A stretch of DNA of 64,000 bases, taken from Ostrea edulis (lineage: Eukaryota). The position numbers and the translations under genes were made by a program. The DNA is taken from contig NC_079164.1 of the NCBI RefSeq assembly GCF_947568905.1, forward strand, positions 6,510,001 to 6,574,000, written 5' to 3'. Below are positions 1-60,181 of the stretch, piece by piece. The notes below the pieces were generated by a model. The model saw only the letters and a list, made by a program, of their open reading frames with translations, ran no database searches and was not told the origin of the DNA. Position 1 is the first letter of the stretch, and the number at the start of each line of letters is the position of its first letter.

Positions 1-1370
1 TTGTATGTACATGCACTACAACTTACATATCAATACTAGTGTCCATCAAAATCTGTCGCTTAGATGTAGTTCTCGTTTCTGAACTTGATCCTCTTTTGGT
101 GGGTGATTTTCGAGCTGGTGTCAATGCATCATAACTGACTGCAGACACTGGATCAGGATGCTTCTCAGATGGCTGGCCATTGACAAAATGCTGATAATTT
201 TAAAAAGGAACACATAAAAAAAATCCAATTTATCTTTTAAATATTGTAACAATTAAAACATCCAATTTTATAATAATGCAAGGTGAAGATAACGAACAGT
301 GATCAATCTCATAACTCCTACAAGCAATACAAAATAGATAGTTGGGCAAACACGGACCCCTGGACACACCAGAGGTGGGATCATGTGCATAGGGGAGTAA
401 GCATCCCCAGTCGACATGTTTCAGTATCCGTTTTACATGATTATAGAATACCTGAATCTACTGTCACAGTGATTGAGTACATGTACAGTACTTTAAGTCT
501 TAAATGGACTGATTCAAGATTTTCCTCATGATTTTATTTTTCACTAAGTTTTAGTGATCAAATTTTACTGTCTAATATGTTAAAAAGGTTTCACAAAAAA
601 ATAAGGTTATACATGACAGAAGCTTAAAATAAAAACAAAATGAATACCAATAGAATGGTTATTTTGCCAAAATTTTGATGCCCCTGTTAAAATCCTGGAT
701 CCTTCGATGCTATATTTAGTCGTCAGGTCGTATTTAACTGCATGGGTTTGCATAAAGGAGTTTTGATTATATAACATAATCACTAATATTTTGATATACC
801 TACCTATTCATTTGCATTTCATATTACCGAGCACTTTACATGTAACTGTGCACGACAAAAAACTTGTATTTACACGAGTCATCAGTCGACCTGCACGGGC
901 ACCAGATCTGCAGCTATGTCCCCTTTGTACTTTCTATTTACGAGTTTAATGCTATTTTAATGAGCGTTACAAGTATCGGTGAGCATATTACCTTTGAACA
1001 CACGTATAAATGTTTCGCTTTCCCTCTTTCTTTGAGTATATCTTCATTAAAAATATATAATGGGGACGACCACACAAGCGTATCCACCTCTTAGCTTTTT
1101 CCAAGTTTCTTCCAGGTTTTGGAAAAGGAATGAACACTATCCCTCCTTGAAGCCGATCTGGGTATCTGCTATCAGTGTTACAAGTGCCCCAACAGCAACG
1201 TTTCACCATAATTGCGTTGTCATAAACCAATGTAAACAATCCGATAAAATGTCGAATTTTCGCTTGTTGTCGGGAAAATGGCGGTGCGTCCTTAGCTTCA
1301 CAAAGCGCGTGTAAATGGAGCTCTCTGATTGGCTAATGCTCCCGTCACTAAAAGATTCGGCGATCCGTCA
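1..1370. mobile_element. Right end of an ISL2EU-type DNA transposon (partial copy)
   Basis: Right TIR TCGGCGATCCGTCA at 1357-1370 followed by AT. Contains THAP exons 1209-992 and 190-27 on the minus strand. Confidence 0.82.
27..1209 (-). pseudogene. THAP-domain 5' exons of the transposase (partial copy)
   Basis: MVKRCCWGTCNTDSRYPDRLQGGIVFIPFPKP at 1209 downward; HFVNGQPSEKHPDP exon at 190-27. Confidence 0.75.
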
Positions 1371-2880: not shown

Positions 2881-4244
2881 TGTTGCTCATTAACACTATA
2901 TACCACGTTTGATCCTAGCTAAAGTTGGAACCTCTTCACAATTTTGGTGGAGGTCTTCTTGCTCTTCAATGCTATGCTTTAGTTTCTCTTACAGATGTGC
3001 GGTTGTAGAGAGGATTTTTGTAAATTTTGGCACGTTTTGCTCACCTTTAAGGCTCCGGGGTGCAGAAGTCCTGAAATTTAAGTTTATGCCCCCTAATCCC
3101 AAAGATGCTGAACCAAATTTAAAAAGAATTGGAAAGGGAGTTGTGTTCAATTGTTGACGAACGGTGTAGGAGGAAGGATGCAGACCAATAACTGAAATCT
3201 TGACTCTGTAGTCTCAAACAACCAAGCCAAATACATAGTGATAATGAAATGAGAAGACTATAAAAATTGTGACCTGCGCAGTACCCTGGTAATCGGTGAT
3301 TAAAACAGACTTACCGGCCCTGCGTTTAGTCTAAGACTAAGACGTTTAATCAACATAGGTAATGACTATTCCTTAATCAAGCGCCCATCACTACAAGTGA
3401 AAGTAACGCGTTTTTCAGATATGACCTTTAAAATGGAAACTCCACTTGACGATAGGGGGTGGTACATTAAAGAACTCTCTCACTATAACGGTCACCATTC
3501 GTGCAACTTCATCTGTAGCTGATGAAGTCGCTACGTTAGTTTAAAATTCTCGAATTGGACATAAAAAAACCCACCCACAACAAAAATACCCTTACTAAAT
3601 ATTTCTCTTGACCAAACAGTGTATTATGACTTTGAACCACGGTTCCTTGGTCAAGGTCACATTTCTATGGACATAACTGTAATATGGAGGGTAATAAATA
3701 TCCATATTAGACACAGAGATTACATATGACCAGATTGTGTTTTACAATCGCGGATTAGTCTGTGTCAGTTTGCCACGGTAGCAGATAAATATTTGATGAA
3801 CGTTTGTTCAGGCCATATCTTCATAATGGAAATTTGGCCAAAGCTCAGAATACTGGCACATACTAGATTTTTACTGACCAGATAGCCTGTTGTGACTCTG
3901 AACCACAATCGTTCGGGCAAGGTCCAGCTCAACAAATAAAAAAATAATAGAAAACATTAGAAATTCACATCACTTTATCGCAAAAGGTGAAGCCCTTTTG
4001 TGCTCAATGTTTAAGATTCCCTTGTTATACTCGTAACTTTTAAAACATGGAACTCGGTAGAAATTGCAAGTAAAACGCTCCTTTCATGATTTTAAATACT
4101 AGAAGATTTATATCTCAAGAAATCTACAGGATATCATTGAGAATATGATCTTGTTTACTGAACACTTGATGAAGTTTGCCGTTCCAGCACCTCCGGGCTA
4201 TAGTTCTGTCGGTGGGTTCTATACATTGGTGAATTCTTTACATA

Positions 4245-22646
<18,402 letters not shown>

Positions 22647-22780
22647 TTCTATTTGTCTCGATGTTACATGTACCTGTACATCAAGATAGTGGTCATGATT
22701 AATAGCGAGATAAACTGTAACTTCCTTGTTCTTCTGACTGGCGTAAAAAGGATTGGCGGATCGCCGATTTTCGTGTACGC

Positions 22781-22840
22781 CCCGCCCACCATGACGACGG
22801 TAACTAGCCCGACATTAGACACATAAACAACATGGCGCGG
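22781..22840 (+). promoter_or_regulatory. GC box (CCGCCC, 22781-22786) and YY1-like AACATGGCG overlapping the ORF2 ATG
   Basis: Motif matches inside the left transposon end, about 135 bp from the host-gene ATG; function is inferred only. Confidence 0.3.
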
Positions 22841-24090
22841 ATCATGTCGTTAAAGGACATACCAGACGATTTTTCTGCATCATACATGTTACATACACCG
22901 TCTCTTCGGCAAAAACAATGGCTGTCGCGTTTATGAAAGATTCTTATGTTAAATCAGTCAAATTGTATGCACAAGAACGCGAAAATATGCTAATAAAAGC
23001 CGAAGTATATCGGAGTCAGAGGAAAACAGAGGACCCACACAAGATCAACATTGATGTCAATTTTGAAGGGAAGAAGTTAGACGATGCACATTGCAGTTGC
23101 AAAGCTGGGTGTGTATACGGTTATTTTGGAGTTATTGAAATAGTTTTTACTTGTTTACAATTTCAATTTTACGTTTTTGTTTATTTAATTTATTGTTCTT
23201 GAAGCGTATAGATCTACGTACATGCGTGCATCAGCCTCAGGTATAAATAGAGAGCGTTTGTAAACAACCTCACTCGGAAAAGTTTTATCATATTTCATAA
23301 ACGTTGCTCAGTGTTGTTCTTATTCTTTTTTTTTCAAATTTCATTTGTTGTATTTTTGTTCCTTTTAGTAACTCGGTGCATTTTACCAATGTTTGTGTTT
23401 CCAGTTACTTGCTAACTAAAGGGTGCACATTCCAGGTCAGTGTAACTATGATTCAGTATCTTTACCAAATACAGGTACACACCTTTCCCAAAAGCCTGTT
23501 TAGATAATTATACTAAACATATATGTGTAAAATAATTTTGTATTGTGGTACATGTAGTGTTATAATGCTATTGTTAATTTGATAAATGTATATTATGCAA
23601 ATTTGGTGTGGGGATTGGTTTCTATTTCTTCATGTTGTGTACATATTACAGGGAAGCAGGTCAATGTGCACATGTCTTAGCTGTTATCATGATTCTGGAG
23701 CAGTGGAAGATTTCTGGTTTTGTTGAAATTCCCTCAATGCTGTCATCAACTTCCCTCCCCAACAGTCGGATAAGCCAAGAGGTGACAAGATTCAACCAGA
23801 ACCAGTGTCCCAGATGATCATTTCCAACCCATCAAACCTAAACAGAAAAAGAAAGCCAATTACCACAATTCTTTTGTTGACACACGGTAAAAAAAATAGT
23901 GTACATCTTTCAATCAATTTTTTCTCTTCATTTTTTTTGGTAATTGTTTTGCATGACTGATTGTCATTCTATATTGCACTCACATGGAGACATTCTTTAA
24001 ATTATATATATACACGTGCCCAATGTTTTGACCAAATTAAGGCTTTTCAGCAGAAAAGACTCACTTAGTTGTAAAGCACCTACAAGGACA

Positions 24091-24298
24091 CCAGGGGTGT
24101 GTTTTACAAAAAAACTTCAGACTAACGACAAACTTTTCAACTTTATTGTAAGTCATTCACTCCGAATGCAAAATATTTTTTAAAGAAAATATTGAAAATT
24201 TAGCCTTCGAAAAGTTTTAATTCATTCATTTTTAAAGTAATAACTGTAAAATACAATTTAAGACTTACCGCAAGTTGTTTTGTAAAACGGGCCCCTGG
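24091..24298. mobile_element. 208-bp MITE in intron 2 of the YqaJ pseudogene
   Basis: Inverted ends CCAGGGGTGTGTTTTACAAAAAAACTT / CCAGGGGCCCGTTTTACAAAACAACTT; no clear TSD. Unit B copy at 52478-52685. Confidence 0.6.
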
Positions 24299-24650
24299 CC
24301 TCTAACAAGTTTTTACAGGTGTAGTTATTAGGTCTCAGCCAAAAGACTCCAAACCACAGAGCTGCCAAGTCACGCCCAAGTGTTTGGCACTGAACACTTG
24401 TTACAACATAAAGTTCTTTTAAATGGTCATTCAAAATTATTTTCAACAATTTTCAGGAAAACTGAAATCGGTGAAATGGATATGGAAATCCTGAAAAAGT
24501 TTAAACAAGCCCCGATTTCCTATCTGGTATCCACAGCAGCAGGACCAACTGTTGACACTCCATTCCGTGCTCATGACATAGGATCTCCTCTCAGCTAGCA
24601 TGTAAGTTACAAACATTATTCAGACAAAATATATGAATTAAACTTTTTAA

Positions 24651-24966
24651 GGAGGTACTCTACAGTATCATAATGACTGACTTCCTTTTAAAACATGGAA
24701 TGAAATATAAATATCAGCAATATTTGTCTTTTCATTTCAAAAATCATCGTCTAGCTGAGTAGCTTAGCATATCGACTGCTGAACTGTAAATCAAGGGTTC
24801 GAGTCCAGCAGAGGTTTAAACATTTTTTTTTGGTCAGATTGCTTTCTACTAAAACTGCATATTGTGTCTAAATGAAGTAAATTTGAAAGTTTTCAATTTC
24901 AAAATATTGTTGCAAGTATACTCCAATTTTCATCCATATCAAATTTCTTTGCTGTAGCATTATACA
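24651..24966. mobile_element. Second member of the TTAA/tRNA-like MITE family, inverted, nested in the ISL2EU element
   Basis: TTAA-GGAGGTACTCTACAG start; GGTTCGAGTCCAGCAG B-box on the plus strand; right end decayed. Unit B copy at 53038 to ~53353. Confidence 0.6.
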
Positions 24967-25085
24967 CTAAATATCAATGATTATTATATTTTCACATGCA
25001 ATCGATTCATTTAAAAAAATCCGTTTGTAGGAAAACCTCGTTGACATTATCAAATTTACACCAAAACACATTTACTGAATGGAGT

Positions 25086-28000
25086 TTAGCAGTTTTCTTT
25101 ATCTTGAATTATATATGGCATAAAATTGGTCAATACAGAACAGGTTAACCATATCTGATCAACAATACTAAAAAAAGAAAGACTAATTTTGCCTGACAAT
25201 ATTTTAAACTGTTTTATACGAGCAATAGCCCGTTTAACATGCACACGATGTTTGGCTATTTTGACAGTTTCTGTTACCTCTGAAGCTTTCATCTGTGTTG
25301 CACATGACGCAAAAAGGTGGAATGTTTAGTCGAAGACCAATAGCTTCGATTTCCTTTTCAATATTAAACCCTTTGTCCACCATAACTCCATCACCATTTT
25401 GTAATTTCCCACATTGTTTAAGGTTTGACAATACTTTAACGAAGCCACTCCCCTTTGTAATAACTTTATCAGATACTGATCCAGAGAATAACATGGAAGA
25501 AAATATTACAGAGTCCCTTGGATCTATGCCCACAAGTCCTTTCAAAGTTGTGCATGACTTATAGTCAGAATAACATTGACTCTGTCGATTGAGAGAACTG
25601 GGCTTTTGTACTTTTAACTCCGTACAGTCAATAATGACGAAAGTTTCTGGAAAATCTTTCTTATAATTTTCAGGCATGTTTTCGATTATTACTTCACGAT
25701 GAGGCCATATATCTACACTACCTAGTCTGAAAAACATGAAATTAATCTAGTGGGTGAATATTGCACTGTAGTCTTGCACAGGTATATCAAACAAATATGA
25801 AATATGTCTAAAGTCAAAGTTTTGTCTCAGTTTTATCAAAACAAGCAAGAGCTGATCCTTTGTTGACAACGATTTTGCACCTCTAAGAGTTTTACTCCAT
25901 ATAATAGGATATTCTTCTGTTGGTACTAAAAATGAGTATAAAACATTGAACCGGTCTTTAGAAAACCCGGTATAATACTGATAATCAGTGTCCTTCAGTT
26001 TTTTATATCCAAATCGTCCTGAATTTTGTTGTTGCAGCTCAAAATAAATTCGGAGCAGTTTTTCCTTCTCTTCAGTTAATGCAGTATTGTCAGCAATAAT
26101 GGCCAGTATTTCAAGTGGATTACAACCTGCAATATATTTAGAAAATTTAATATTATTTCTTTTTGTAGTATTCATGGGTAGTACAATAATGTAAAACATA
26201 TATGATAAAAAGAATCTTGAATGGTTTTTCATTAGACATGATTTATATACAACTCAACATGGATCCCGATAGAAAACACACTTTTTTCCATGAAAGTCAA
26301 ATCCGATCAACTCATTGGAGATCCTAAACATAACCCTCAACATTATATGTCATGTCTATCATTACAATGTATTTATTATTGCATAATTTCAGGCACCATT
26401 GATTTTACCTATTACAAAACCCCGTGCAGCAGAAAACTGTGGAAGTACTGTGTTCCCAAAAGCCCTTCACACCTGCGTTGACCTTGAATGCATTCAAAAT
26501 CTTACACATGAATGGACTGAGCTTAATTTGACACAGAGTGATGCAATTAATTTGGAAAAATCAACAAGATCTCAAAGTCTGAACCAAATATGGCATACAG
26601 AACGAAGTAAGAGAATAACGGCATCCAATTTCGGACTAATCATAAGAAGAAAAAAAGACGTAAACCAGAAATTTTTAAAGAACACATTTCAAAAGAATGA
26701 TTTCACATCTTCTGCTACATCATATGGTAAAGCGAATGAACACATTGCCAAGCAAATATACATTAAGAAAACGGGACACCATTTTCATGATATAGGTTTG
26801 ATTGTAAACACAGAACTACCATTTCTAGGCGCTACTCCTGATGCCATAGTGTGTGATAAGTCTAAAAGTGACTTGATTGAAATTAAATGTCCTTACTCTG
26901 TCAGAGACAAGACCATCAGTGAAGGATGTGAAACAAGAAATGATTTCTTCCTCCAAAGAAATGGCGACACTTTCAGCTTACAACATGAGCATTCCCACTG
27001 GTATCAAGTCCAAGGACAGCTTCTAGTCACCGGAGCTCCATTTTGTGACTTCATTACATATACCACACAAGACGTATATGTAGAAAGAGTTTATCCAAAC
27101 AAGTCTACAATGGATGTGCTAGTTCAAAAACTAGCTAAGTTTTATATCCAAAATTGAAGCCATTTATCCACAAATGTGATTCTGATCTACATGTATGATG
27201 TTGATTTACCACACCAACTATGAAAACAAGAATGTATTTGTACCTGGCATAATATGCCCCCTCCCCTCATGACAACAAGAACACAATAAACACTGACTCA
27301 GTGTGACAGAAAGATTTGTTTACTGGTCATTAATATCTTTGTATGGTAGATGTATTTAGAGAATCTTGGAGATAAAATTCTGTTTGCTGTCATACACTTA
27401 AATTTGTATATAAATGTACTAGATAATTCAAATTCAGTTGAGTAAAGTTCTCTTTACACTTTCAGTGGCGTATTTACATTTTTTTTTATTTTGGTGCATA
27501 GATATCATGTCATTTGCAAATACTGCTCCTTGATACTAATATTCAATCATAGAACATAATTACCAGGAATAATTGGGTTAACATTTTCTGTTGCTGATGC
27601 TTGAGAACTTGTAGTTGCAGTCGTTGAAACATGTTGAATTTCAGATGATGCCTTTAACACATCACTGCCAGCTTCATTGTGCTGATTTCTTTGATATGGA
27701 TTACAAAGAAACATTTTTCTTACAAATATTTTCTTAAAGATGAAATTTTGTCAGACTGGGTAAAGGTTTTGCTTAAATATAGTACACTGTACATGCATTG
27801 TCATTTTTTTAAATGTGAGAATATTTACTTCAAAATGCTTTATCTTGCAGATGTATCATACAATACTATATATATATATATATATATATATAGTTATAAC
27901 ATAGGGTGTCAAGTCCCTATTTATTCCTATAAACTCAAAGGTTCTTATATATACCCTACAAGTCATTATAAAAATTCCTATAAAACCCTATATATCCACA

Positions 28001-29595
28001 AAAAAAAGAGAGAAGAAAGAAATGGCAGTCCTATTTTCAAAAATGATAAAAAAAAAAGAAAAAAAAAGAGAGCTGATTCTAGATTGATATTTAATTAGAT
28101 TGTTACATGTATGAAGAGAATAACTATGATCATTGTATAAGAACTTTTTGTTGGATGGAAAACTGTCCACATCTGAAAGGATTTTGTCTTTGTTTATGTT
28201 TAATATTATTTCTTCTCCAGAAACATACTATGCAGAAACAATAAACTTTGTTACAAATTCTTTAATAAAAACCCTATTTATTCCTATAAATCTGCTGTAA
28301 AATCCCTATATTTGCCCTATAAACTGCAAATTGTTTTCCTTATAATCCCATATTTTTTAGACCCAAAGTGGCTTAAATTGACACCCTGTTGTATGTACAT
28401 GCACTACAACTTACATATCAGTACTAGTGTCCATCAAAATCTGTTGCTTAGATGTAGTTCTCGTTTCTGAACTTGACCCTCTTTTGGTGGGTGGTTTTCG
28501 AGCTGGTGTCAATGCATCATAACTGACTGCAGACACTGGATCAGGATGCATCTCAGATGGCTGGCCATTGACAAAATGCTGATAATTTTAAAAAGGAACA
28601 CATAAAAAAATCCAATTTATCTTTTAAATATTGTAACAATTAAAACACCCAATTTTATAATAATGCAAGGTGAAGATAACGAACAGTGATCAATCTCATA
28701 ACTCCTACAAGCAATACAAAATAGATAGTTGGGCAAACACGAACCCCTGGACACACCAGAGGTGGGATCAGGTGCATAGGGAAGTAAGCATCCTCAGTCG
28801 ACATGTTTCAGTATCCGTTTTACATGATTATAGAATACCTGAATCTACTGTCACAGTGATTGAGTACATGTACAGTACTTTAAGTCTTAAATGGACTGAT
28901 TCAAGATTTTCCTCATAATTTTATTTTTCACTAAGTTTTAGTGATCAAATTCTACTGTCTAATATGTTAAAATGGTTTCACAAAAAATAAGGTTATACAT
29001 GACAGAAGCTTAAAATAAAAACAAAATGAATACCAATAGAATGGTTATTTTGCCAAACTTTTGATCCCCCTGTTAAAATCCTGAATCCTTCGATGCTATA
29101 TTTAGTCGTCAGGTCGTATTTAACTGCATGGGTTTGCATAAAGGAGTTTTGATTATATAACATAATCACTAATATTTTGATATACCTACCTATTCATTTG
29201 CATTTCATATTACCGAGCACTTTACATGTAACTGTGCACGACAAAAAACTTGTATTTACACGAGTCATCAGTCGACCTGCACGGGCACCAGATCTGCAGC
29301 TATGTCCCCTTTGTACTTTCTATTTACGAGTTTAATGCTATTTTAATGAGCGTTACAAGTATCGGTGAGCATATTACCTTTGAACACACGTATAAATGTT
29401 TCGCTTTCCCTCTTTCTTTGAGTATATCTTCATTAAAAATATATAATGGGGACGACCACACAAGCGTATCCACCTCTTAGCTTTTTCCAAGTTTCTTCCA
29501 GGTTTTGGAAAAGGAATGAACACTATCTCTCCTTGAAGCCGATCTGGGTATCTGCTATCAGTGTTACAAGTGCCCCAACAGCAACGTTTCACCAT
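25086..29595 (-). pseudogene. THAP-HTH-DDE transposase (ISL2EU/Harbinger-like), disrupted
   Basis: Exons 29595-29378 (MVKRCCWGTCNTDSRY...FPKP...RW...CGRP, frameshift, then YVCSK), 28578-28415 (HFVNGQP), ~28172-28107 (DHSY), ~27681-27564, and 26126-25086 (YYTGF, KLRQNF, IDCTE, YSDYK, VMVDKGF, IPPF, RVHVKRAI). TAG at 25747-25749, frameshift near 25290, and the presumed catalytic E (consensus HVERAI) is replaced by K. Phases of the middle exons are uncertain. Confidence 0.85.
27866..27891. repeat. (TA)n microsatellite inside the transposon; expanded by about 24 bp in unit B (~56253-56302)
   Basis: Direct reading; accounts for most of the length difference between units A and B. Confidence 0.9.
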
Positions 29596-29661
29596 AATTG
29601 CGTTGTCATAAACCAATGTAAACAATCCGATAAAATGTCGAATTTTCGCTTGTTGTCGGGA

Positions 29662-29720
29662 AAAATGGCGGTGCGTCCTTAGCTTCAGAAAGCGCGTGTA
29701 AATGGAGCTCTCTGATTGGC
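29662..29720 (-). promoter_or_regulatory. Putative transposase promoter elements: YY1-like AAAATGGCGG (29662-29671) and CCAAT box (CTGATTGGCT, 29712-29721)
   Basis: Motif matches between the right TIR and the THAP ATG (29595); function is inferred only. Confidence 0.35.
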
Positions 29721-32631
29721 TGATGCTCCCGTCACTAAAAGATTCGGCGATCCGTCAATTTCAGCATGTCGATCTTTATCTTTACTTATTCTATTTGAAA
29801 CTTCCTGTTAATACTTTACAGAAGGGTGTCAACCTTTCTTATATATATGTAAAATTAATGTGGTACGGTACATCCAAAAGTTTCTTTTTAATGACGTCAT
29901 ACAGTGATGTTTACACTTTATATGATGTTGTAGGTCTTAAAAATGGTAACCAAGCAAAATACATTTACGCTAAGCATATTTTTGCTTCGCATCTGTGTAT
30001 ATTCCGATCTACACAACATGTTCATTCGATATATCACAGTGAACTCGAAATAAAAGATATCACAGAGCCATCCACATCTGTTTCGAACTTAGATATCGTA
30101 TTGAAGATAAATGTTAGCGGCAAATTAACAACTCAACTTTATGAAAAACGGGATGATTTCAGCTTCTTCATCTTCAACTTCCCATACTTATAATATTGCA
30201 TTATCACTTGCATATGGTGTTCATGTCTCTCAATCGATTCGATACGCAAGGGTGACAAATTGATGTCACTAATTTTCATTCATATGTCGATTCGATATAT
30301 ACCTTTGAACTCGAAATTTAAAACACCACACGGTCGTCCACTTCTGCTTCATATTTATGTACTTTATTGAAAATAGATATTAACAGCAAACTAACAACTC
30401 AACTTTATGACAATCGGGATTATATCAGCTTTTCCATCGTCAACTTCCCATAGTTATGTAGCAATATTCCATTATCACCTGCATATGGTGTTTATATCTC
30501 TCAACTGATTTGATACGCAAAAGCTTGTTCTGCGTATGATTAGTTTTTAAATCGAGGCAGGTTACTGACAAACAAGTTGATGGTACAGGGTTTTTAACAG
30601 TCTGGTTTAAAATCAGCATTTCGCAATTTTTATGGTCGTTATAATAATCTAGTTTGCCAATAGAACCTATTTTTTGTTTGAAACGCCGTCTGACGTATTT
30701 CATAACGATTGTTAAGCCGTTCTTTGCACACTGATTTTAACTACGGATTACTCCATTTACCTGATCAAGATATGAAGCTGACGGTGGAGGTGACCGGTCG
30801 ATAGGAAAGCTTAATTATCCTAGGTAACTGATGCCACCTCTGGTATATCCAGGGGTCCGTGTTTGCCCACCTCTCTATTTTGTATTGTCTATAGGAGTTA
30901 TGGGATTGATCACTGTTCGTTATCTTTACCTTTCATGTGTCACTTATACATCTGATAAGATGTTATTTAAAACCCCTACCTCTGGGATCGCATGCTCCTT
31001 CTGAATATCTAATTAGTATCAAGAGCGTTAAAGATGTTATTTAAAACCCCTGCCTCTGGGACGGCATGCTCCTTCTAAATATCTAATTAGTATCAAGAGC
31101 GTTAAAGATGTTATTTAAAACCCCTACCTCTGGGATCGCAGGCTCCTTCTAAATATCTAATTAGTATCAAGAGCGTTAAAGATGTTATTTTAAACCCCTA
31201 CCTCTGGGATCGCAGGCTCCTTCTAAATATCTGATTAGTATCAAGAGCGTTAAAGATGTTATTTAAATGTTGCTCATTAACACTATATACCACGTTTGAT
31301 CCTAGCTAAAGTTGGAACCTCTTCACAATTTTGGTGGAGGTCTTCTTGCTCTTCAATGCTATGCTTTAGTTTCTCTTACAGATGTGCGGTTGTAGAGAGG
31401 ATTTTTGTAAATTTTGGCACGTTTTGCTCACCTTTAAGGCTCCGGGGTGCAGAAGTCCTGAAATTTAAGTTTATGCCCCCTAATCCCAAAGATGCTGAAC
31501 CAAATTTAAAAAGAATTGGAAAGGGAGTTGTGTTCAATTGTTGACGAACGGTGTAGGAGGAAGGATGCAGACCAATAACTGAAATCTTGACTCTGTAGTC
31601 TCAAACAACCAAGCCAAATACATAGTGATAATGAAATGAGAAGACTATAAAAATTGTGACCTACGCAGTACCCTGGTAATCGGTGATTAAAACAGACTTA
31701 CCGGCCCTGCGTTTAGTCTAAGACTAAGACGTTTAATCAACATAGGTAATGACTATTCCTTAATCAAGCGCCCATCACTACAAGTGAAAGTAACGCGTTT
31801 TTCAGATATGACCTTTAAAATGGAAACTCCACTTGACGATAGGGGGTGGTACATTAAAGAACTCTCTCACTATAACGGTCACCATTCGTGCAACTTCATC
31901 TGTAGCTGATGAAGTCGCTACGTTAGTTTAAAATTCTCGAATTGGACATAAAAAAACCCACCCACAACAAAAATACCCTTACTAAATATTTCTCTTGACC
32001 AAACAGTGTATTATGACTTTGAACCACGGTTCCTTGGTCAAGGTCACATTTCTATGGACATAACTGTAATATGGAGGGTAATAAATATCCATATTAGACA
32101 CAGAGATTACATATGACCAGATTGTGTTTTACAATCGCGGATTAGTCTGTGTCAGTTTGCCACGGTAGCAGATAAATATTTGATGAACGTTTGTTCAGGC
32201 CATATCTTCATAATGGAAATTTGGCCAAAGCTCAGAATACTGGCACATACTAGATTTTTACTGACCAGATAGTCTGTTGTGACTCTGAACCACAATCGTT
32301 CGGGCAAGGTCCAGCTCAACAAATAAAAAAATAATAGAAAACATTAGAAATTCACATCACTTTATCGCAAAAGGTGAAGCCCTTTTGTGCTCAATGTTTA
32401 AGATTCCCTTGTTATACTCGTAACTTTTAAAACATGGAACTCGGTAGAAATTGCAAGTAAAACGCTCCTTTCATGATTTTAAATACTAGAAGATTTATAT
32501 CTCAAGAAATCTACAGGATATCATTGAGAATATGATCTTGTTTACTGAACACTTGATGAAGTTTGCCGTTCCAGCACCTCCGGGCTATAGTTCTGTCGGT
32601 GAGTTCTATACATTGGTGAATTCTTTACATA

Positions 32632-51033
<18,402 letters not shown>

Positions 51034-51218
51034 TTCTATTTGTCTCGATGTTACATGTACCTGTACATCAAGATAGTGGTCATGATTAATAGCGAGATAA
51101 ACTGTAACTTCCTTGTTCTTCTGACTGGCGTAAAAAGGATTGGCGGATCGCCGATTTTCGTGTACGCCCCGCCCACCATGACGACGGTAACTAGCCCGAC
51201 ATTAGACACATAAACAAC

Positions 51219-54200
51219 ATGGCGCGGATCATGTCGTTAAAGGACATACCAGACGATTTTTCTGCATCATACATGTTACATACACCGTCTCTTCGGCAAA
51301 AACAATGGCTGTCGCGTTTATGAAAGATTCTTATGTTAAATCAGTCAAATTGTATGCACAAGAACGCGAAAATATGCTAATAAAAGCCGAAGTATATCGG
51401 AGTCAGAGGAAAACAGAGGACCCACACAAGATCAACATTGATGTCAATTTTGAAGGGAAGAAGTTAGACGATGCACATTGCAGTTGCAAAGCTGGGTGTG
51501 TATACGGTTATTTTGGAGTTATTGAAATAGTTTTTACTTGTTTACAATTTCAATTTTACGTTTTTGTTTATTTAATTTATTGTTCTTGAAGCGTATAGAT
51601 CTACGTACATGCGTGCATCAGCCTCAGGTATAAATAGAGAGCGTTTGTAAACAACCTCACTCGGAAAAGTTTTATCATATTTCATAAACGTTGCTCAGTG
51701 TTGTTCTTATTCTTTTTTTTTCAAATTTCATTTGTTGTATTTTTGTTCCTTTTAGTAACTCGGTGCATTTTACCAATGTTTGTGTTTCCAGTTACTTGCT
51801 AACTAAAGGGTGCACATTCCAGGTCAGTGTAACTATGATTCAGTATCTTTACCAAATACAGGTACACACCTTTCCCAAAAGCCTGTTTAGATAATTATAC
51901 TAAACATATATGTGTAAAATAATTTTGTATTGTGGTACATGTAGTGTTATAATGCTATTGTTAATTTGATAAATGTATATTATGCAAATTTGGTGTGGGG
52001 ATTGGTTTCTATTTCTTCATGTTGTGTACATATTACAGGGAAGCAGGTCAATGTGCACATGTCTTAGCTGTTATCATGATTCTGGAGCAGTGGAAGATTT
52101 CTGGTTTTGTTGAAATTCCCTCAATGCTGTCATCAACTTCCCTCCCCAACAGTCGGATAAGCCAAGAGGTGACAAGATTCAACCAGAACCAGTGTCCCAG
52201 ATGATCATTTCCAACCCATCAAACCTAAACAGAAAAAGAAAGCCAATTACCACAATTCTTTTGTTGACACACGGTAAAAAAAATAGTGTACATCTTTCAA
52301 TCAATTTTTTCTCTTCATTTTTTTTGGTAATTGTTTTGCATGACTGATTGTCATTCTATATTGCACTCACATGGAGACATTCTTTAAATTATATATATAC
52401 ACGTGCCCAATGTTTTGACCAAATTAAGGCTTTTCAGCAGAAAAGACTCACTTAGTTGTAAAGCACCTACAAGGACACCAGGGGTGTGTTTTACAAAAAA
52501 ACTTCAGACTAACGACAAACTTTTCAACTTTATTGTAAGTCATTCACTCCGAATGCAAAATATTTTTTAAAGAAAATATTGAAAATTTAGCCTTCGAAAA
52601 GTTTTAATTCATTCATTTTTAAAGTAATAACTGTAAAATACAATTTAAGACTTACCGCAAGTTGTTTTGTAAAACGGGCCCCTGGCCTCTAACAAGTTTT
52701 TACAGGTGTAGTTATTAGGTCTCAGCCAAAAGACTCCAAACCACAGAGCTGCCAAGTCACGCCCAAGTGTTTGGCACTGAACACTTGTTACAACATAAAG
52801 TTCTTTTAAATGGTCATTCAAAATTATTTTCAACAATTTTCAGGAAAACTGAAATCGGTGAAATGGATATGGAAATCCTGAAAAAGTTTAAACAAGCCCC
52901 GATTTCCTATCTGGTATCCACAGCAGCAGGACCAACTGTTGACACTCCATTCCGTGCTCATGACATAGGATCTCCTCTCAGCTAGCATGTAAGTTACAAA
53001 CATTATTCAGACAAAATATATGAATTAAACTTTTTAAGGAGGTACTCTACAGTATCATAATGACTGACTTCCTTTTAAAACATGGAATGAAATATAAATA
53101 TCAGCAATATTTGTCTTTTCATTTCAAAAATCATCGTCTAGCTGAGTAGCTTAGCATATCGACTGCTGAACTGTAAATCAAGGGTTCGAGTCCAGCAGAG
53201 GTTTAAACATTTTTTTTTGGTCAGATTGCTTTCTACTAAAACTGCATATTGTGTCTAAATGAAGTAAATTTGAAAGTTTTCAATTTCAAAATATTGTTGC
53301 AAGTATACTCCAATTTTCATCCATATCAAATTTCTTTGCTGTAGCATTATACACTAAATATCAATGATTATTATATTTTCACATGCAATCGATTCATTTA
53401 AAAAAATCCGTTTGTAGGAAAACCTCGTTGACATTATCAAATTTACACCAAAACACATTTACTGAATGGAGTTTAGCAGTTTTCTTTATCTTGAATTATA
53501 TATGGCATAAAATTGGTCAATACAGAACAGGTTAACCATATCTGATCAACAATACTAAAAAAAGAAAGACTAATTTTGCCTGACAATATTTTAAACTGTT
53601 TTATACGAGCAATAGCCCGTTTAACATGCACACGATGTTTGGCTATTTTGACAGTTTCTGTTACCTCTGAAGCTTTCATCTGTGTTGCACATGACGCAAA
53701 AAGGTGGAATGTTTAGTCGAAGACCAATAGCTTCGATTTCCTTTTCAATATTAAACCCTTTGTCCACCATAACTCCATCACCATTTTGTAATTTCCCACA
53801 TTGTTTAAGGTTTGACAATACTTTAACGAAGCCACTCCCCTTTGTAATAACTTTATCAGATACTGATCCAGAGAATAACATGGAAGAAAATATTACAGAG
53901 TCCCTTGGATCTATGCCCACAAGTCCTTTCAAAGTTGTGCATGACTTATAGTCAGAATAACATTGACTCTGTCGATTGAGAGAACTGGGCTTTTGTACTT
54001 TTAACTCCGTACAGTCAATAATGACGAAAGTTTCTGGAAAATCTTTCTTATAATTTTCAGGCATGTTTTCGATTATTACTTCACGATGAGGCCATATATC
54101 TACACTACCTAGTCTGAAAAACATGAAATTAATCTAGTGGGTGAATATTGCACTGCAGTCTTGCACAGGTATATCAAACAAATATGAAATATGTCTAAAG

Positions 54201-55544
54201 TCAAAGTTTTGTCTCAGTTTTATCAAAACAAGCAAGAGCTGATCCTTTGTTGACAACGATTTTGCACCTCTAAGAGTTTTACTCCATATAATAGGATATT
54301 CTTCTGTTGGTACTAAAAATGAGTATAAAACATTGAACCGGTCTTTAGAAAACCCGGTATAATACTGATAATCAGTGTCCTTCAGTTTTTTATATCCAAA
54401 TCGTCCTGAATTTTGTTGTTGCAGCTCAAAATAAATTCGGAGCAGTTTTTCCTTCTCTTCAGTTAATGCAGTATTGTCAGCAATAATGGCCAGTATTTCA
54501 AGTGGATTACAACCTGCAATATATTTAGAAAATTTAATATTATTTCTTTTTGTAGTATTCATGGGTAGTACAATAATGTAAAACATATATGATAAAAAGA
54601 ATCTTGAATGGTTTTTCATTAGACATGATTTATATACAACTCAACATGGATCCCGATAGAAAACACACTTTTTTCCATGAAAGTCAAATCCGATCAACTC
54701 ATTGGAGATCCTAAACATAACCCTCAACATTATATGTCATGTCTATCATTACAATGTATTTATTATTGCATAATTTCAGGCACCATTGATTTTACCTATT
54801 ACAAAACCCCGTGCAGCAGAAAACTGTGGAAGTACTGTGTTCCCAAAAGCCCTTCACACCTGCGTTGACCTTGAATGCATTCAAAATCTTACACATGAAT
54901 GGACTGAGCTTAATTTGACACAGAGTGATGCAATTAATTTGGAAAAATCAACAAGATCTCAAAGTCTGAACCAAATATGGCATACAGAACGAAGTAAGAG
55001 AATAACGGCATCCAATTTCGGACTAATCATAAGAAGAAAAAAAGACGTAAACCAGAAATTTTTAAAGAACACATTTCAAAAGAATGATTTCACATCTTCT
55101 GCTACATCATATGGTAAAGCGAATGAACACATTGCCAAGCAAATATACATTAAGAAAACGGGACACCATTTTCATGATATAGGTTTGATTGTAAACACAG
55201 AACTACCATTTCTAGGCGCTACTCCTGATGCCATAGTGTGTGATAAGTCTAAAAGTGACTTGATTGAAATTAAATGTCCTTACTCTGTCAGAGACAAGAC
55301 CATCAGTGAAGGATGTGAAACAAGAAATGATTTCTTCCTCCAAAGAAATGGCGACACTTTCAGCTTACAACATGAGCATTCCCACTGGTATCAAGTCCAA
55401 GGACAGCTTCTAGTCACCGGAGCTCCATTTTGTGACTTCATTACATATACCACACAAGACGTATATGTAGAAAGAGTTTATCCAAACAAGTCTACAATGG
55501 ATGTGCTAGTTCAAAAACTAGCTAAGTTTTATATCCAAAATTGA
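51219..55544 (+). pseudogene. SWIM + YqaJ exonuclease-like transposon ORF2, unit B copy, disrupted
   Basis: Same structure and lesions as 22832-27157; 252-aa ORF at 54786-55544. Confidence 0.85.
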
Positions 55545-56250
55545 AGCCATTTATCCACAAATGTGATTCTGATCTACATGTATGATGTTGATTTACCACA
55601 CCAACTATGAAAACAAGAATGTATTTGTACCTGGCATAATATGCCCCCTCCCCTCATGACAACAAGAACACAATAAACACTGACTCAGTGTGACAGAAAG
55701 ATTTGTTTACTGGTCATTAATATCTTTGTATGGTAGATGTATTTAGAGAATCTTGGAGATAAAATTCTGTTTGCTGTCATACACTTAAATTTGTATATAA
55801 ATGTACTAGATAATTCAAATTCAGTTGAGTAAAGTTCTCTTTACACTTTCAGTGGCGTATTTACATTTTTTTTTATTTTGGTGCATAGATATCATGTCAT
55901 TTGCAAATACTGCTCCTTGATACTAATATTCAATCATAGAACATAATTACCAGGAATAATTGGGTTAACATTTTCTGTTGCTGATGCTTGAGAACTTGTA
56001 GTTGCAGTCGTTGAAACATGTTGAATTTCAGATGATGCCTTTAACACATCACTGCCAGCTTCATTGTGCTGATTTCTTTGATATGGATTACAAAGAAACA
56101 TTTTTCTTACAAATATTTTCTTAAAGATGAAATTTTGTCAGACTGGGTAAAGGTTTTGCTTAAATATAGTACACTGTACATGCATTGTCATTTTTTTAAA
56201 TGTGAGAATATTTACTTCAAAATGCTTTATCTTGCAGATGTATCATACAA

Positions 56251-56307
<57 letters not shown>

Positions 56308-58007
56308 TAACATAGGGTGTCAAGTCCCTATTTATTCCTATAAACTCAAAGGTTCTTATATATACCCTACAAGTCATTATAAAAATTCCTATAAAACCCT
56401 ATATATCCACAAAAAAAAGAGAGAAGAAAGAAATGGCAGTCCTATTTTCAAAAATGATAAAAAAAAAAGAAAAAAAAAAGAGAGCTGATTCTAGATTGAT
56501 ATTTAATTAGATTGTTACATGTATGAAGAGAATAACTATGATCATTGTATAAGAACTTTTTGTTGGATGGAAAACTGTCCACATCTGAAAGGATTTTGTC
56601 TTTGTTTATGTTTAATATTATTTCTTCTCCAGAAACATACTATGCAGAAACAATAAACTTTGTTACAAATTCTTTAATAAAAACCCTATTTATTCCTATA
56701 AATCTGCTGTAAAATCCCTATATTTGCCCTATAAACTGCAAATTGTTTTCCTTATAATCCCATATTTTTTAGACCCAAAGTGGCTTAAATTGACACCCTG
56801 TTGTATGTACATGCACTACAACTTACATATCAGTACTAGTGTCCATCAAAATCTGTTGCTTAGATGTAGTTCTCGTTTCTGAACTTGACCCTCTTTTGGT
56901 GGGTGGTTTTCGAGCTGGTGTCAATGCATCATAACTGACTGCAGACACTGGATCAGGATGCATCTCAGATGGCTGGCCATTGACAAAATGCTGATAATTT
57001 TAAAAAGGAACACATAAAAAAATCCAATTTATCTTTTAAATATTGTAACAATTAAAACACCCAATTTTATAATAATGCAAGGTGAAGATAACGAACAGTG
57101 ATCAATCTCATAACTCCTACAAGCAATACAAAATAGATAGTTGGGCAAACACGAACCCCTGGACACACCAGAGGTGGGATCAGGTGCATAGGGAAGTAAG
57201 CATCCTCAGTCGACATGTTTCAGTATCCGTTTTACATGATTATAGAATACCTGAATCTACTGTCACAGTGATTGAGTACATGTACAGTACTTTAAGTCTT
57301 AAATGGACTGATTCAAGATTTTCCTCATAATTTTATTTTTCACTAAGTTTTAGTGATCAAATTCTACTGTCTAATATGTTAAAATGGTTTCACAAAAAAT
57401 AAGGTTATACATGACAGAAGCTTAAAATAAAAACAAAATGAATACCAATAGAATGGTTATTTTGCCAAACTTTTGATCCCCCTGTTAAAATCCTGAATCC
57501 TTCGATGCTATATTTAGTCGTCAGGTCGTATTTAACTGCATGGGTTTGCATAAAGGAGTTTTGATTATATAACATAATCACTAATATTTTGATATACCTA
57601 CCTATTCATTTGCATTTCATATTACCGAGCACTTTACATGTAACTGTGCACGACAAAAAACTTGTATTTACACGAGTCATCAGTCGACCTGCACGGGCAC
57701 CAGATCTGCAGCTATGTCCCCTTTGTACTTTCTATTTACGAGTTTAATGCTATTTTAATGAGCGTTACAAGTATCGGTGAGCATATTACCTTTGAACACA
57801 CGTATAAATGTTTCGCTTTCCCTCTTTCTTTGAGTATATCTTCATTAAAAATATATAATGGGGACGACCACACAAGCGTATCCACCTCTTAGCTTTTTCC
57901 AAGTTTCTTCCAGGTTTTGGAAAAGGAATGAACACTATCTCTCCTTGAAGCCGATCTGGGTATCTGCTATCAGTGTTACAAGTGCCCCAACAGCAACGTT
58001 TCACCAT
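53473..58007 (-). pseudogene. THAP-HTH-DDE transposase, unit B copy, disrupted
   Basis: Same exons and lesions as the unit A copy (ORFs 53473-53679, 53621-54124, 54134-54619, 57786-58037). Confidence 0.85.
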
Positions 58008-60181
58008 AATTGCGTTGTCATAAACCAATGTAAACAATCCGATAAAATGTCGAATTTTCGCTTGTTGTCGGGAAAAATGGCGGTGCGTCCTTAGCTTCAG
58101 AAAGCGCGTGTAAATGGAGCTCTCTGATTGGCTGATGCTCCCGTCACTAAAAGATTCGGCGATCCGTCAATTTCAGCATGTCGATCTTTATCTTTACTTA
58201 TTCTATTTGAAACTTCCTGTTAATACTTTACAGAAGGGTGTCAACCTTTCTTATATATATGTAAAATTAATGTGGTACGGTACATCCAAAAGTTTCTTTT
58301 TAATGACGTCATACAGTGATGTTTACACTTTATATGATGTTGTAGGTCTTAAAAATGGTAACCAAGCAAAATACATTTACGCTAAGCATATTTTTGCTTC
58401 GCATCTGTGTATATTCCGATCTACACAACATGTTCATTCGATATATCACAGTGAACTCGAAATAAAAGATATCACAGAGCCATCCACATCTGTTTCGAAC
58501 TTAGATATCGTATTGAAGATAAATGTTAGCGGCAAATTAACAACTCAACTTTATGAAAAACGGGATGATTTCAGCTTCTTCATCTTCAACTTCCCATACT
58601 TATAATATTGCATTATCACTTGCATATAGTGTTTATGTCTCTCAATCGATTCGATACGCAAGGGTGACAAATTGATGTCATTAATTTTCATTCATATGTC
58701 GATTCGATATATAACTTTGAACTCGAAATTTAAAACACCACACGGTCGTCCATTTCTGCTTCATATTTATGTACTTTATTGAAAATAGATATTAACGGCA
58801 AACCAACAACTCAACTTTATGACAATCGGGATGATATCAGCTTTTCCATTGTCAACTTCCCATAGTTATGTAGCAATATTCCATTATCACCTGCATATGG
58901 TGTTTATATCTCTCAACTGATTTGATAAGCAAAAGCTTGTTCTGCGTAGGATCAGTTTTTAAATCGAGGCAGGTTACTGACAAACAAGTTGATGGTACAG
59001 GGTTTTTAACAGTCTGGTTTAAAATCAGCATTTCGCAATTTTTATGGTCGTTATAATAATCTAGTTTGCCAATAGAACCTATTTTTTGTTTGAAACGCCG
59101 TCTGACGTATTTCATAACGATTGTTAAGCCGTTCTTTGCACACTGATGTTAACTACGGATTACTCAATTTACCTGATCAAGATATGAAGCTGACGGTGGA
59201 GGTGACCGGTCGATAGGAAAGCTTAATTATCCTAAGTAACTGATGCCACCTCTGGTATGTCCAGGGGTCGGTGTTTGCCCACCTCTCTATTTTGTATTGT
59301 CTATAGGAGTTATGGGATTGATCACTGTTCGTTATCTTCACCTTTCATATGTCACTTATATATCTAGGATGAAGGTGATGAAACTTTTACATCGTATGAT
59401 CCTTACAATTGTACGATCATCAAGTAAAGGGGAGCACATTGCCTTAACATTAAGAGACAGACAGGGAATAAATAGCATTGTTCTACTGTGTAAACCATGA
59501 TAGAATAATAAAATATAAGGGTATTATGACATTATCTTACAGAGTGTTGAATTTAGAATCCCGGAAACCAACTAGCTTTAACCGCACGGTTCTTGCATTG
59601 AATGGACTTCAATTTTTCACTGTGTACTGGTGACATGCTTTATTACATATGTTCCGAATTATTTAAAGAAACCTATGCAGACACTGATGTTACAGGAGTT
59701 TCGACAGTTTCGTTTAATGTAAGCAAGTGATAATATATATTGCTGCATAAATATGGAAAGTTGACGATGGAGAAGCTGAAATCGTTTGTCGCTGATATTC
59801 AATTTCAATTCATACATAATTAGTTGAAATGCTAAACGTATTCACACGTATGCGTTTCGCTGTCAAATGTCAAAGTGAATTGAAATTCCTTTTATGAAAA
59901 GCAAGTTCATTCTGATGTTTTCATTGGCGTTCGAGTTAAGTATGGCGGTTTTTAAAACTTACTACGTATCCATGTACAGTTAAATATGCATATACGTATC
60001 GGAAGAACTTTATTGATTTGGAATCACATATGCTATTTGAAATTCTGATAAGAACCGGGGAAAAGACACAGTGTAACGCGCTATATAGGCAAGGTAAACC
60101 ACATCGTTTTCTTGTCAAAGTTAAAACTGATGCACTACATTTTAATTTACTACTGATCATTTGTTGACAGAGACTTTTGCA

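What the first reader, a model, noticed from the sequence alone, without database searches (positions are those of the whole stretch)
22754..29757. Transposon whose two genes are mutually interleaved in antisense: each terminal exon sits in the other gene's last intron
Seen in sequence: the YqaJ gene (+) starts at the left TIR and its last intron (24602-26392) contains the entire DDE exon of the transposase (-, 26126-25086). The transposase starts at the right TIR and its last intron (27563-26127) contains the entire YqaJ nuclease exon (+, 26393-27157). Both junctions are GT-AG and join in frame (...NPIIP|GCNPLE... and ...H|APLILP...), and the coding exons do not overlap. Established: ISL2EU elements pair a THAP-DDE transposase with a YqaJ (lambda-exonuclease fold) protein. 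Inference: this zipper layout makes the primary transcripts complementary over about 2 kb. That could give transcriptional interference, mutually exclusive expression or dsRNA self-silencing, and any internal deletion would tend to remove both catalytic exons. I do not know this layout to be described, but I cannot check Repbase or Dfam here.
Basis: partly seen in the sequence, partly recalled or inferred. Interest (0 to 1): 0.8.

Follow-up and report, generated by a model that had tools for sequence, protein, structure and literature searches.

The report
Interleaved two-gene ISL2EU transposon, dead copy
This oyster-like DNA holds a broken copy of a known jumping gene (ISL2EU) whose transposase gene and nuclease gene really are threaded through each other on opposite strands; the same layout occurs in relatives from mussels, scallops, snails, fish, a sea lily and an acorn worm, and no paper I could search describes it.

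Summary
Window 22754-29757 is a 7.0-kb ISL2EU (PHIS superfamily) DNA transposon with 14-bp TIRs and an AT target-site duplication.

It carries a THAP-HTH-DDE transposase gene on the minus strand (4 exons) and a SWIM-YqaJ nuclease gene on the plus strand (4 exons). Each gene's last coding exon lies inside the other gene's last intron. Spliced contigs from two RNA-like runs carry both key joints, 24601|26393 and 27564|26126. Two DNA-like runs carry neither.

The layout is inherited rather than a local accident. I found it in ten further loci: Ostrea (two families), Mytilus (two families), Argopecten, Batillaria, Fundulus, a crinoid, a hemichordate and, in fragmentary form, an amphioxus. The host introns sit at the same positions and phases wherever exact maps were available. 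A sea-anemone element has the plain tail-to-tail layout.

Each gene has four lesions. The "three copies" in the window come from a 28.4-kb tandem duplication, not from transposition.

The functional ideas (transcriptional interference, dsRNA) remain untested. Both spliced mRNAs occur in the same two RNA runs.

The scan found this layout before on other DNA of this genome (s1-311816). No searchable paper describes it. Repbase and Dfam could not be checked.

The parts
22752..22753 (.). Left target-site duplication, AT
   Evidence: The same AT flanks occur at L001 and L002.
22754..22767 (+). Left terminal inverted repeat, TGGCGGATCGCCGA
   Evidence: 5 matches in the window against 0.02 expected.
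22918..23108 (+). YqaJ-gene exon 1. It encodes the N-terminal half of the SWIM-like zinc finger and ends ...CSCKA|G in phase 2.
   Evidence: The same split is seen in fish and gastropod proteins.
23652..23886 (+). YqaJ-gene exon 2 (..GQCAHVLAVIMILEQWK..). This copy has two frameshifts here.
   Evidence: The X1 and X2 contigs cover 23680-23892.
24457..24601 (+). YqaJ-gene exon 3. It has an in-frame TAG at 24596-24598 where Ostrea edulis P0001 has Y.
   Evidence: A 147-nt RNA unitig covers 24456-24602.
24602..26392 (+). Last intron of the YqaJ gene (GT..AG, phase 0). It contains the whole transposase HTH/DDE exon in antisense.
   Evidence: Joint skipping 1791 nt in X1 and X2. The position is homologous in five species.
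26393..27157 (+). YqaJ-gene exon 4, holding the YqaJ/lambda-exonuclease-like domain. A frameshift near 27150 truncates the C-terminus. The 3' UTR reaches at least 27362.
   Evidence: Pfam PF09588, E 6.7e-16. RNA contigs cover 26389-27328 and 26890-27362..
25086..26126 (-). Transposase exon 4 (HTH_Tnp_4 plus DDE_Tnp_4). It has a TAG at 25749-25747, a frameshift near 25311, and the catalytic E replaced by K (HRVHVKRAI). The 3' UTR runs down to 24921 or below.
   Evidence: A 1447-nt RNA contig covers 24921-26124.
26127..27563 (-). Last intron of the transposase gene (GT..AG on the minus strand, phase 1). It contains the whole YqaJ exon 4 in antisense.
   Evidence: Joint skipping 1437 nt with CT..AC ends. 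The position and phase match the hemichordate P0173.
27564..27688 (-). Transposase exon 3 (linker, ...ENVNPIIP|G)
   Evidence: joints 26124->27562 and 27687->28414..
28415..28578 (-). Transposase exon 2 (linker)
29378..29595 (-). Transposase exon 1 (THAP finger, MVKRCCWGTCN...VCSK|HF). It has a frameshift near 29440.
   Evidence: (joint 28578->29378).
29744..29757 (-). Right terminal inverted repeat, TGACGGATCGCCGA
29758..29759 (.). Right target-site duplication, AT
51141..58169 (+). Second copy of the same insertion, made by the 28.4-kb tandem duplication. It has the same flanks and differs from the first copy at 3 sites.
1..1370 (+). Right-hand 1.37 kb of a third copy of the same duplicated unit, cut by the window edge

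Best explanation
Window 22754-29757 is a mutationally dead copy of an ISL2EU-group (PHIS superfamily) cut-and-paste DNA transposon.

In a working element, two promoters next to the two TIRs drive two spliced genes towards each other. From the left comes a SWIM-finger plus YqaJ (lambda-exonuclease-fold) nuclease. From the right comes a THAP-HTH-DDE transposase.

The two catalytic terminal exons sit back to back in the middle in swapped order. Each polymerase therefore has to read antisense through the partner's catalytic exon, and that stretch is then removed as part of the last intron. This is shown by spliced RNA contigs.

The primary transcripts are complementary over at least 2.4 kb. The mature mRNAs, as far as they are mapped, are not complementary.

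The layout is an inherited architecture of a deep branch of ISL2EU. The same two introns, at the same protein positions and phases where exact maps were available, host the partner's exon in bivalves, a gastropod, a teleost and a hemichordate; a crinoid shows the same order of parts.

Inference: it arose once from a plain convergent ancestor like the sea-anemone element. One possible path is duplication of the central segment followed by reciprocal loss. It persists mainly because it cannot be undone without destroying a gene. Convergent transcription and nascent dsRNA are likely side effects that may damp expression.

This particular copy does nothing. Each gene has four disabling lesions, and it was later copied passively by a 28.4-kb tandem duplication.
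For: Element identity:
- TIRs and AT target-site duplication.
- Pfam domains.
- Published ISL2EU features match: a THAP/HTH/DDE transposase, a YqaJ ORF and an AT duplication (PMC4482050; PMC4122938; PMC9179366).

Splicing:
- Joints skipping 1791, 1437, 726 and 799 nt are present only in the RNA-like runs X1 and X2. They are absent from X3 and X8.
- Ostrea edulis protein P0001 reads ...GSPLSYH|APLILP across the YqaJ junction.

Conservation of the layout:
- L001 Ostrea and L002 Mytilus. In L002, NCBI annotates overlapping genes at 6001-10031 (+) and 7906-13817 (-).
- L003 Fundulus and L004 Batillaria.
- L008 Argopecten and L009 crinoid.
- L010 hemichordate.
- L011 and L012, which are divergent families.

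Intron position and phase are conserved.

The plain layout occurs in the cnidarian L006.

Lesions in this copy. Segmental duplication.
Against: - The RNA evidence comes from unstranded assembled contigs of copies about 96% identical to this one. The runs are labelled RNA only by a guess. Strand is inferred from the splice-site motifs.
- The YqaJ joint has only 22 nt on its shorter side.
- Neither transcript end is mapped, so exon overlap beyond 24921 or 27362 is not excluded.
- The origin scenario and any regulatory effect are inference.
- Only one plain-layout element was examined here, and no tree was built.
- Horizontal transfer means that host phylogeny does not date the layout.
- Repbase and Dfam could not be consulted.
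Confidence: 0.88

Rival explanations
1. The interleaving is an adaptive self-limiting device. Convergent transcription across about 2.4 kb yields nuclear dsRNA and siRNA/piRNA, or polymerase collision. This couples and throttles transposase and nuclease expression, and selection keeps the layout for that reason.
For: - The primary transcripts must be complementary, given the mapped exons.
- The layout is retained in families whose DDE exons are only 44-57% identical, and in four phyla.
- The two acceptor sites are kept close together, at most about 40-270 nt apart in most loci.
Against: - No small-RNA or stranded data were available.
- Both spliced mRNAs coexist in the same runs.
- Retention is equally well explained by a structural ratchet.
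- A plain-layout element exists (L006), and the scan notes further plain families in this genome (untested). The device is therefore not required for ISL2EU.
Confidence: 0.25
2. The YqaJ exon is an independent single-exon gene, or a separate insertion, nested in a transposase intron. The upstream SWIM exons belong to something else, so there is simple nesting and no reciprocal interleaving.
For: Some annotated relatives are single-exon YqaJ proteins of 209-231 aa (P0067 and P0076).
Against: - RNA contigs join exon 3 to exon 4.
- Proteins read through the junction at a conserved phase-0 site in five species.
- The cnidarian protein P0119 carries both parts in one exon.
- The SWIM exon lies next to the TIR in all elements examined.
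Confidence: 0.03
3. The locus is a host gene pair, either domesticated transposase and nuclease genes or an assembly or annotation artefact, and not a transposon.
For: The three copies in the window come from a segmental duplication and not from transposition. That could also reflect an assembly duplication.
Against: - TIRs with AT duplications occur at three unrelated loci.
- An independent 94%-identical copy lies elsewhere in Ostrea edulis.
- There are many related proteins and contigs.
- This copy is riddled with stops and frameshifts.
Confidence: 0.03

Closest known systems
ISL2EU group of the PHIS (PIF/Harbinger-ISL2EU-Spy) superfamily of DNA transposons (PMC4482050, PMC4122938, PMC9179366)
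   Same: - THAP + HTH_Tnp_4 + DDE_Tnp_4 transposase.
- A second gene with a YqaJ exonuclease domain.
- AT target-site duplication and short TIRs.
- Animal hosts, including oysters and teleosts.
   Different: - The papers describe and draw 'two ORFs'. None that I could search mentions that their terminal exons are reciprocally nested in antisense.
- The TIR here starts TGG/TGA, whereas the usual start is GG.
- At 7.0 kb the element is longer than the published mean of about 4.8 kb, because of nested repeats.
- This copy is dead.
Plain convergent ISL2EU element of the sea anemone Actinostola (L006)
   Same: - The same two genes, both reading inwards from the TIRs.
- The same SWIM-splitting intron (CSCKA|G).
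   Different: - The YqaJ gene has no intron at the GS.LSYH position.
- The transposase DDE exon lies downstream of the YqaJ gene, so the two are tail to tail and not interleaved.
PIF/Harbinger two-gene transposons (transposase plus Myb/SANT protein)
   Same: - A related DDE_Tnp_4 transposase.
- A two-gene element in which, for Harbinger, both proteins are needed for transposition (stated in PMC9179366).
   Different: - The partner is a DNA-binding Myb/SANT protein and not a nuclease.
- The duplication is 3 bp (TWA).
- The papers I read report no interleaving.
Interleaved or reciprocally nested host genes, such as the cases catalogued in Drosophila genome annotation (recalled from memory; not verified here)
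   Same: Exons of two opposite-strand genes alternate along the DNA, so each gene has an exon in an intron of the other.
   Different: Those are scattered host-gene pairs. Here the arrangement belongs to a mobile element and is conserved over a deep branch of its family, with both catalytic exons involved.

Membership tests
ISL2EU (PHIS superfamily) | DDE_Tnp_4-type transposase with HTH_Tnp_4 and an N-terminal THAP finger | tested here: met
   HTH_Tnp_4 at 3.9e-10, DDE_Tnp_4 at 2.1e-22 and 2.9e-12, THAP at 0.0037. The THAP match is weak because the exon is frameshifted. Full-length relatives carry PF05485.
ISL2EU (PHIS superfamily) | Second gene encoding a YqaJ exonuclease-domain protein | tested here: met
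   PF09588 at 6.7e-16. The PD...ExK motif (ATPD...IEIKCP) is visible in the translation.
ISL2EU (PHIS superfamily) | 2-bp AT target-site duplication | tested here: met
   AT is present on both sides in the window, L001 and L002.
ISL2EU (PHIS superfamily) | Short TIRs, usually beginning GG | tested here: inconclusive
   The 14-bp TIR has 13 of 14 positions matching. With an AT duplication, the element begins TGG on the left and TGA on the right, so the GG follows an extra T.
ISL2EU (PHIS superfamily) | Intact catalytic DDE triad (needed for autonomy, not for membership) | tested here: not met
   The third catalytic residue is K instead of E (HRVHVKRAI against HRVHVERAI in nine relatives). There is also a TAG and two frameshifts.
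Reciprocally interleaved antisense gene pair | Each gene's terminal coding exon lies wholly inside the other gene's last intron, shown by splicing | tested here: met
   Joints 24601|26393 and 27564|26126 occur in RNA-like contigs only. The coordinates were read.
Reciprocally interleaved antisense gene pair | The layout is inherited, with homologous host introns in relatives | tested here: met
   Nine further complete or nearly complete loci are interleaved, and an amphioxus fragment has the same order. The YqaJ intron is phase 0 after GS.LS[YF][HQ] in five species. The transposase intron is phase 1 at the same place in oyster and hemichordate.
dsRNA/siRNA-generating convergent transcription unit | Small RNAs from both strands of the overlap, or reduced expression caused by the overlap | not testable with these tools
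   Only assembled contigs of four runs could be laid. No small-RNA or stranded reads were available.

The most novel reading that the evidence does not exclude
Reciprocal interleaving of the transposase and nuclease genes is the defining architecture of a major, deep branch of ISL2EU. It arose once from a plain convergent ancestor. It is maintained because obligatory convergent transcription through both catalytic exons gives the element a built-in, copy-autonomous brake, through interference or dsRNA-derived small RNAs, and an unbreakable linkage of its two genes. That would be a transposon-encoded self-regulation mechanism not so far described for DNA transposons.
Probability: 0.2. Interest if true: 0.75.

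Novelty: new variant of a known kind. Interest (0 to 1): 0.58.

Why it matters
ISL2EU is one of the least studied animal DNA transposon groups, and the role of its YqaJ nuclease is unknown. Its two genes prove to be physically threaded through each other, and the arrangement is kept across phyla. This has three consequences.

1. Annotation. Gene predictors and TE curators split or truncate these genes. The NCBI models seen here omit the SWIM exon or the THAP exons.

2. TE evolution. Any internal deletion between the outer exons removes both catalytic exons. The two genes also cannot be separated by recombination.

3. Regulation. The element is a natural, multi-copy test case for the effect of obligatory convergent transcription. 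The earlier scan notes report plain-layout ISL2EU families in the same genome, which would serve as internal controls.

The copy in this window is itself an ordinary dead transposon.

Tried and rejected
- Independent copies within the window. The extra TIR matches at 1357, 51141 and 58156 looked like further insertions. They belong to a 28.4-kb tandem duplication and differ at only 3 sites, so they say nothing about transposition.

- Rebuilding the 524-aa Mytilus transposase model by enumerating GT-AG exon chains. This gave 543 equally valid solutions and was dropped. I used homologous proteins instead.

- My first alignment piece 'win_HTH' was cut in the wrong frame and is ignored.

- TIRs of the fish (L003) and cnidarian (L006) elements. 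Inverted repeats were found, but an AT duplication could not be fixed at their ends. I make no claim about their ends.

- Literature. Eight searches found no description of the layout. The search was too loose to be informative. Supplementary Table S2 of PMC4482050 lists only ORF lengths.

- ARAGORN found no tRNA in the SINE-like insert.

- I did not run the large representative-protein search, structure prediction or fold search. The domains were unambiguous.

Full report
**1. What is at the coordinates**

TGGCGGATCGCCGA starts at 22754 on the plus strand, and TGACGGATCGCCGA ends at 29757 on the minus strand. The degenerate pattern has 5 matches in the window against 0.02 expected from shuffles. 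Both ends are flanked by AT. This is the target-site duplication published for ISL2EU (PMC4482050).

Pfam finds these domains:
- YqaJ on the plus strand at 26399-27154 (E 6.7e-16).
- On the minus strand, HTH_Tnp_4 (3.9e-10) and DDE_Tnp_4 in two pieces (2.1e-22 and 2.9e-12).
- A weak THAP match (0.0037).

This is the published coding content of ISL2EU.

**2. The splice pattern**

Reading the sequence and laying contigs of four public runs gives the two gene models below.

| Gene | Strand | Exon 1 | Exon 2 | Exon 3 | Exon 4 |
|---|---|---|---|---|---|
| Transposase | minus | 29595-29378 | 28578-28415 | 27688-27564 | 26126-25086 |
| YqaJ | plus | 22918-23108 | 23652-23886 | 24457-24601 | 26393-27157 |

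Runs X1 and X2 are labelled RNA only by a guess. They nevertheless contain spliced contigs with these joints:
- 26124->27562, skipping 1437 nt, with CT..AC ends and cut +2, which gives 27564|26126. It lies in a 1447-nt contig that also carries the next joint.
- 27687->28414, skipping 726 nt.
- 28578->29378, skipping 799 nt, with CT..AC ends.
- 24597->26389, skipping 1791 nt.

Its 4-nt displacement is what an aligner would do if the expressed copy reads TAT-CAT where this copy reads TAG-CAT. The 1-nt displacement of the 726-nt joint is explained the same way: the canonical GT at 28414-28413 and AG at 27690-27689 give the same skipped length.

The DNA-like runs X3 and X8 cover the region and show none of these joints. 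The joints are therefore splicing and not genomic deletions.

An NCBI protein of Ostrea edulis (P0001, 95% identical) reads ...GSPLSYH|APLILPITK... straight across the YqaJ junction.

RNA contigs reach down to 24921 for the transposase 3' end and up to 27362 for the YqaJ 3' end. The primary transcripts are thus complementary over at least 2.4 kb. No overlap of mature exons is seen.

**3.

The spliced reading frames, comparison with relatives and the indels seen against the runs show four lesions in each gene.

Transposase:
- A frameshift near 29440 in the THAP exon.
- A TAG at 25749-25747, where relatives have W.
- A 1-nt insertion near 25311, absent from all four runs.
- The third catalytic residue changed from E to K (HRVHVKRAI).

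YqaJ gene:
- Two frameshifts in exon 2.
- A frameshift near 27150 that cuts off the last residues.

**4. The other 'copies' in the window**

The TIR pattern also occurs at 1357, 51141 and 58156. The window contains a 28.4-kb tandem duplication: 1-30953 matches 28389-59365 at 99.56%. The second transposon copy (51141-58169) has the same flanks. It differs from the first only by one SNP, a (TA)12 microsatellite expansion and one A. These are passive copies, or an assembly duplication, and not transposition events.

**5. Is the layout a local accident?**

It is not. I fetched the loci of related proteins and mapped both genes on them.

| Locus | Organism | Finding |
|---|---|---|
| L001 | Ostrea edulis | Independent copy, 94% identical, at another locus; TIRs and AT duplication at 5064 and 12996; interleaved |
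| L002 | Mytilus trossulus | 33-bp TIRs and AT duplication at 4180 and 13988. NCBI annotates a 380-aa YqaJ gene at 6001-10031 (+) overlapping a 524-aa THAP/HTH/DDE gene at 7906-13817 (-) |
| L003 | Fundulus heteroclitus | Interleaved |
| L004 | Batillaria attramentaria | Interleaved |
| L008 | Argopecten irradians | Interleaved |
| L009 | Anneissia japonica (crinoid) | Interleaved |
| L010 | Glandiceps talaboti (hemichordate) | Interleaved |
| L011 | O. edulis, divergent family | Interleaved |
| L012 | M. trossulus, divergent family | Interleaved |
| L005 | Amphioxus | Fragment with the same order of parts |

The DDE exons of the two divergent families are only 44-57% identical to the others.

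Exact exon mapping shows that the host introns are homologous. The YqaJ intron that houses the DDE exon is phase 0, right after the motif GS.LS[YF][HQ], in oyster, mussel, scallop, gastropod and fish. The transposase intron that houses the YqaJ exon is phase 1, two residues before the P of [DN]P[LI][DE]IL, in oyster and hemichordate.

The two terminal exons always lie back to back with their acceptor sites facing each other. The distance between them is at most about 40 to 270 nt in most loci.

The SWIM-finger exon sits next to the TIR in all elements where it was found (it was not detected in L011), and its CSCKA|G intron is shared. The NCBI YqaJ models that start at an internal Met are therefore truncated.

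**6. A plain relative**

In the sea anemone Actinostola (L006), an element with TIRs of 41 nt or more (7042-7082 and 12731-12771) has the same two genes reading inwards. The YqaJ gene has no intron at the GS.LSYH position. The transposase (12755 down to about 10951) lies entirely downstream of it. The interleaved form therefore looks derived.

One path that keeps both genes working at each step is duplication of the central [YqaJ exon][DDE exon] segment followed by loss of one copy of each. This is inference.

**7. How it most likely works**

Shown:
- Both genes are spliced as described.
- Both spliced mRNAs occur in the same two RNA-like runs.
- The layout is inherited.

Inferred:
- The promoters lie near the TIRs.
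- Each polymerase must traverse the partner's catalytic exon in antisense. Convergent transcription, and possibly nascent dsRNA, are therefore unavoidable when both genes of one copy are active.

I judge a frozen architecture, one that cannot be reverted without losing a gene, to be the main reason for its persistence. I give about 0.25 to the idea that it is selected as a self-limiting device. Nothing here tests small RNAs or interference. 'Mutually exclusive expression' is not supported at the level of a sample.

**8. Comparison with what is known, and novelty**

The element is a member of ISL2EU by coding content and target-site duplication. The TIR start (TGG, not GG) is a minor deviation.

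The papers that describe ISL2EU (PMC4482050, PMC4122938, PMC9179366) speak of two ORFs and draw them as boxes. None contains the words overlap, antisense, opposite or intron in this context. Supplementary Table S2 of PMC4482050 lists only ORF lengths. Further searches found nothing.

Repbase and Dfam, whose curators must have spliced these genes to derive the proteins, could not be consulted. The layout may be implicit there.

This scan had already reached the same reading on another piece of this genome. Note s1-311816 reports the layout in molluscs and bony fishes and says another branch is plain. I confirm it independently. I extend it to a crinoid and a hemichordate, and I add the conserved intron positions and the RNA joints. 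First-reader notes also report 'facing' ISL2EU families with a 7-exon SAP-SWIM-YqaJ partner in the same genome. I did not test those.

**9. Verdict**

The structural interpretation is supported. The functional speculation is untested. This copy is an ordinary dead transposon. The architecture it displays is real, deep, and apparently undescribed in the open literature.

Noticed in passing
window 1-30953 and 28389-59365 (also 56801-59365 against 1-2566): A 28.4-kb tandem segmental duplication at 99.56% identity, with the start of a third unit. It could be real or an assembly duplication. It carries the transposon along with it.
   Followed up: partly
window 28480-28880 (also 21724-21864, 50111-50251, 59209-59348, 14792-14923, 43178-43309): A very high-copy repeat of about 140 nt sits inside transposase intron 1. 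Summed contig depth reaches 10^4 to 10^6 in all four runs. Many 'goes back 34-43' joints point to a short internal tandem repeat. In the Ostrea edulis copy L001, this stretch is replaced by a different insert of about 1 kb.
   Followed up: partly
window 24680-25079: A second high-copy insert, with depth in the thousands, lies in the YqaJ last intron and the transposase 3' flank. It has a tRNA-like GGACTCGAACCC box on the minus strand, so it looks SINE-like. ARAGORN calls no tRNA there.
   Followed up: partly
window 22140-22246 and 30148-30500: Fragments of another repeat family flank the transposon in inverted orientation (86 nt at 92%, plus shorter arms). Their ORFs carry the motif ..[27 protein letters not shown].., which is common in bivalve repeats.
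   Followed up: no
L001 6001-9525 and L002 6001-10031: The NCBI gene models of the YqaJ partner (Ostrea edulis LOC125665758 and Mytilus trossulus LOC134693427) start at an internal Met. They omit the SWIM exon, which lies near the TIR at L001 5232-5417 and L002 4357-4545.
   Followed up: yes
L001 5058-5063 and 12997-13002: The insertion site of the second oyster copy is a perfect palindrome, AACA-AT-TGTT. This fits the published A|AT|T target preference.
   Followed up: no
L006 9295-10700: The spacer between the two convergent genes of the sea-anemone element is filled with several near-perfect short palindromes. They look like MITE-like inserts.
   Followed up: no
window 27610 (22 nt): The expressed transposase contig of run X1 lacks 22 nt of exon 3 that this copy and a DNA-like contig have. 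The abundantly represented transcript may therefore itself come from a defective copy.
   Followed up: no
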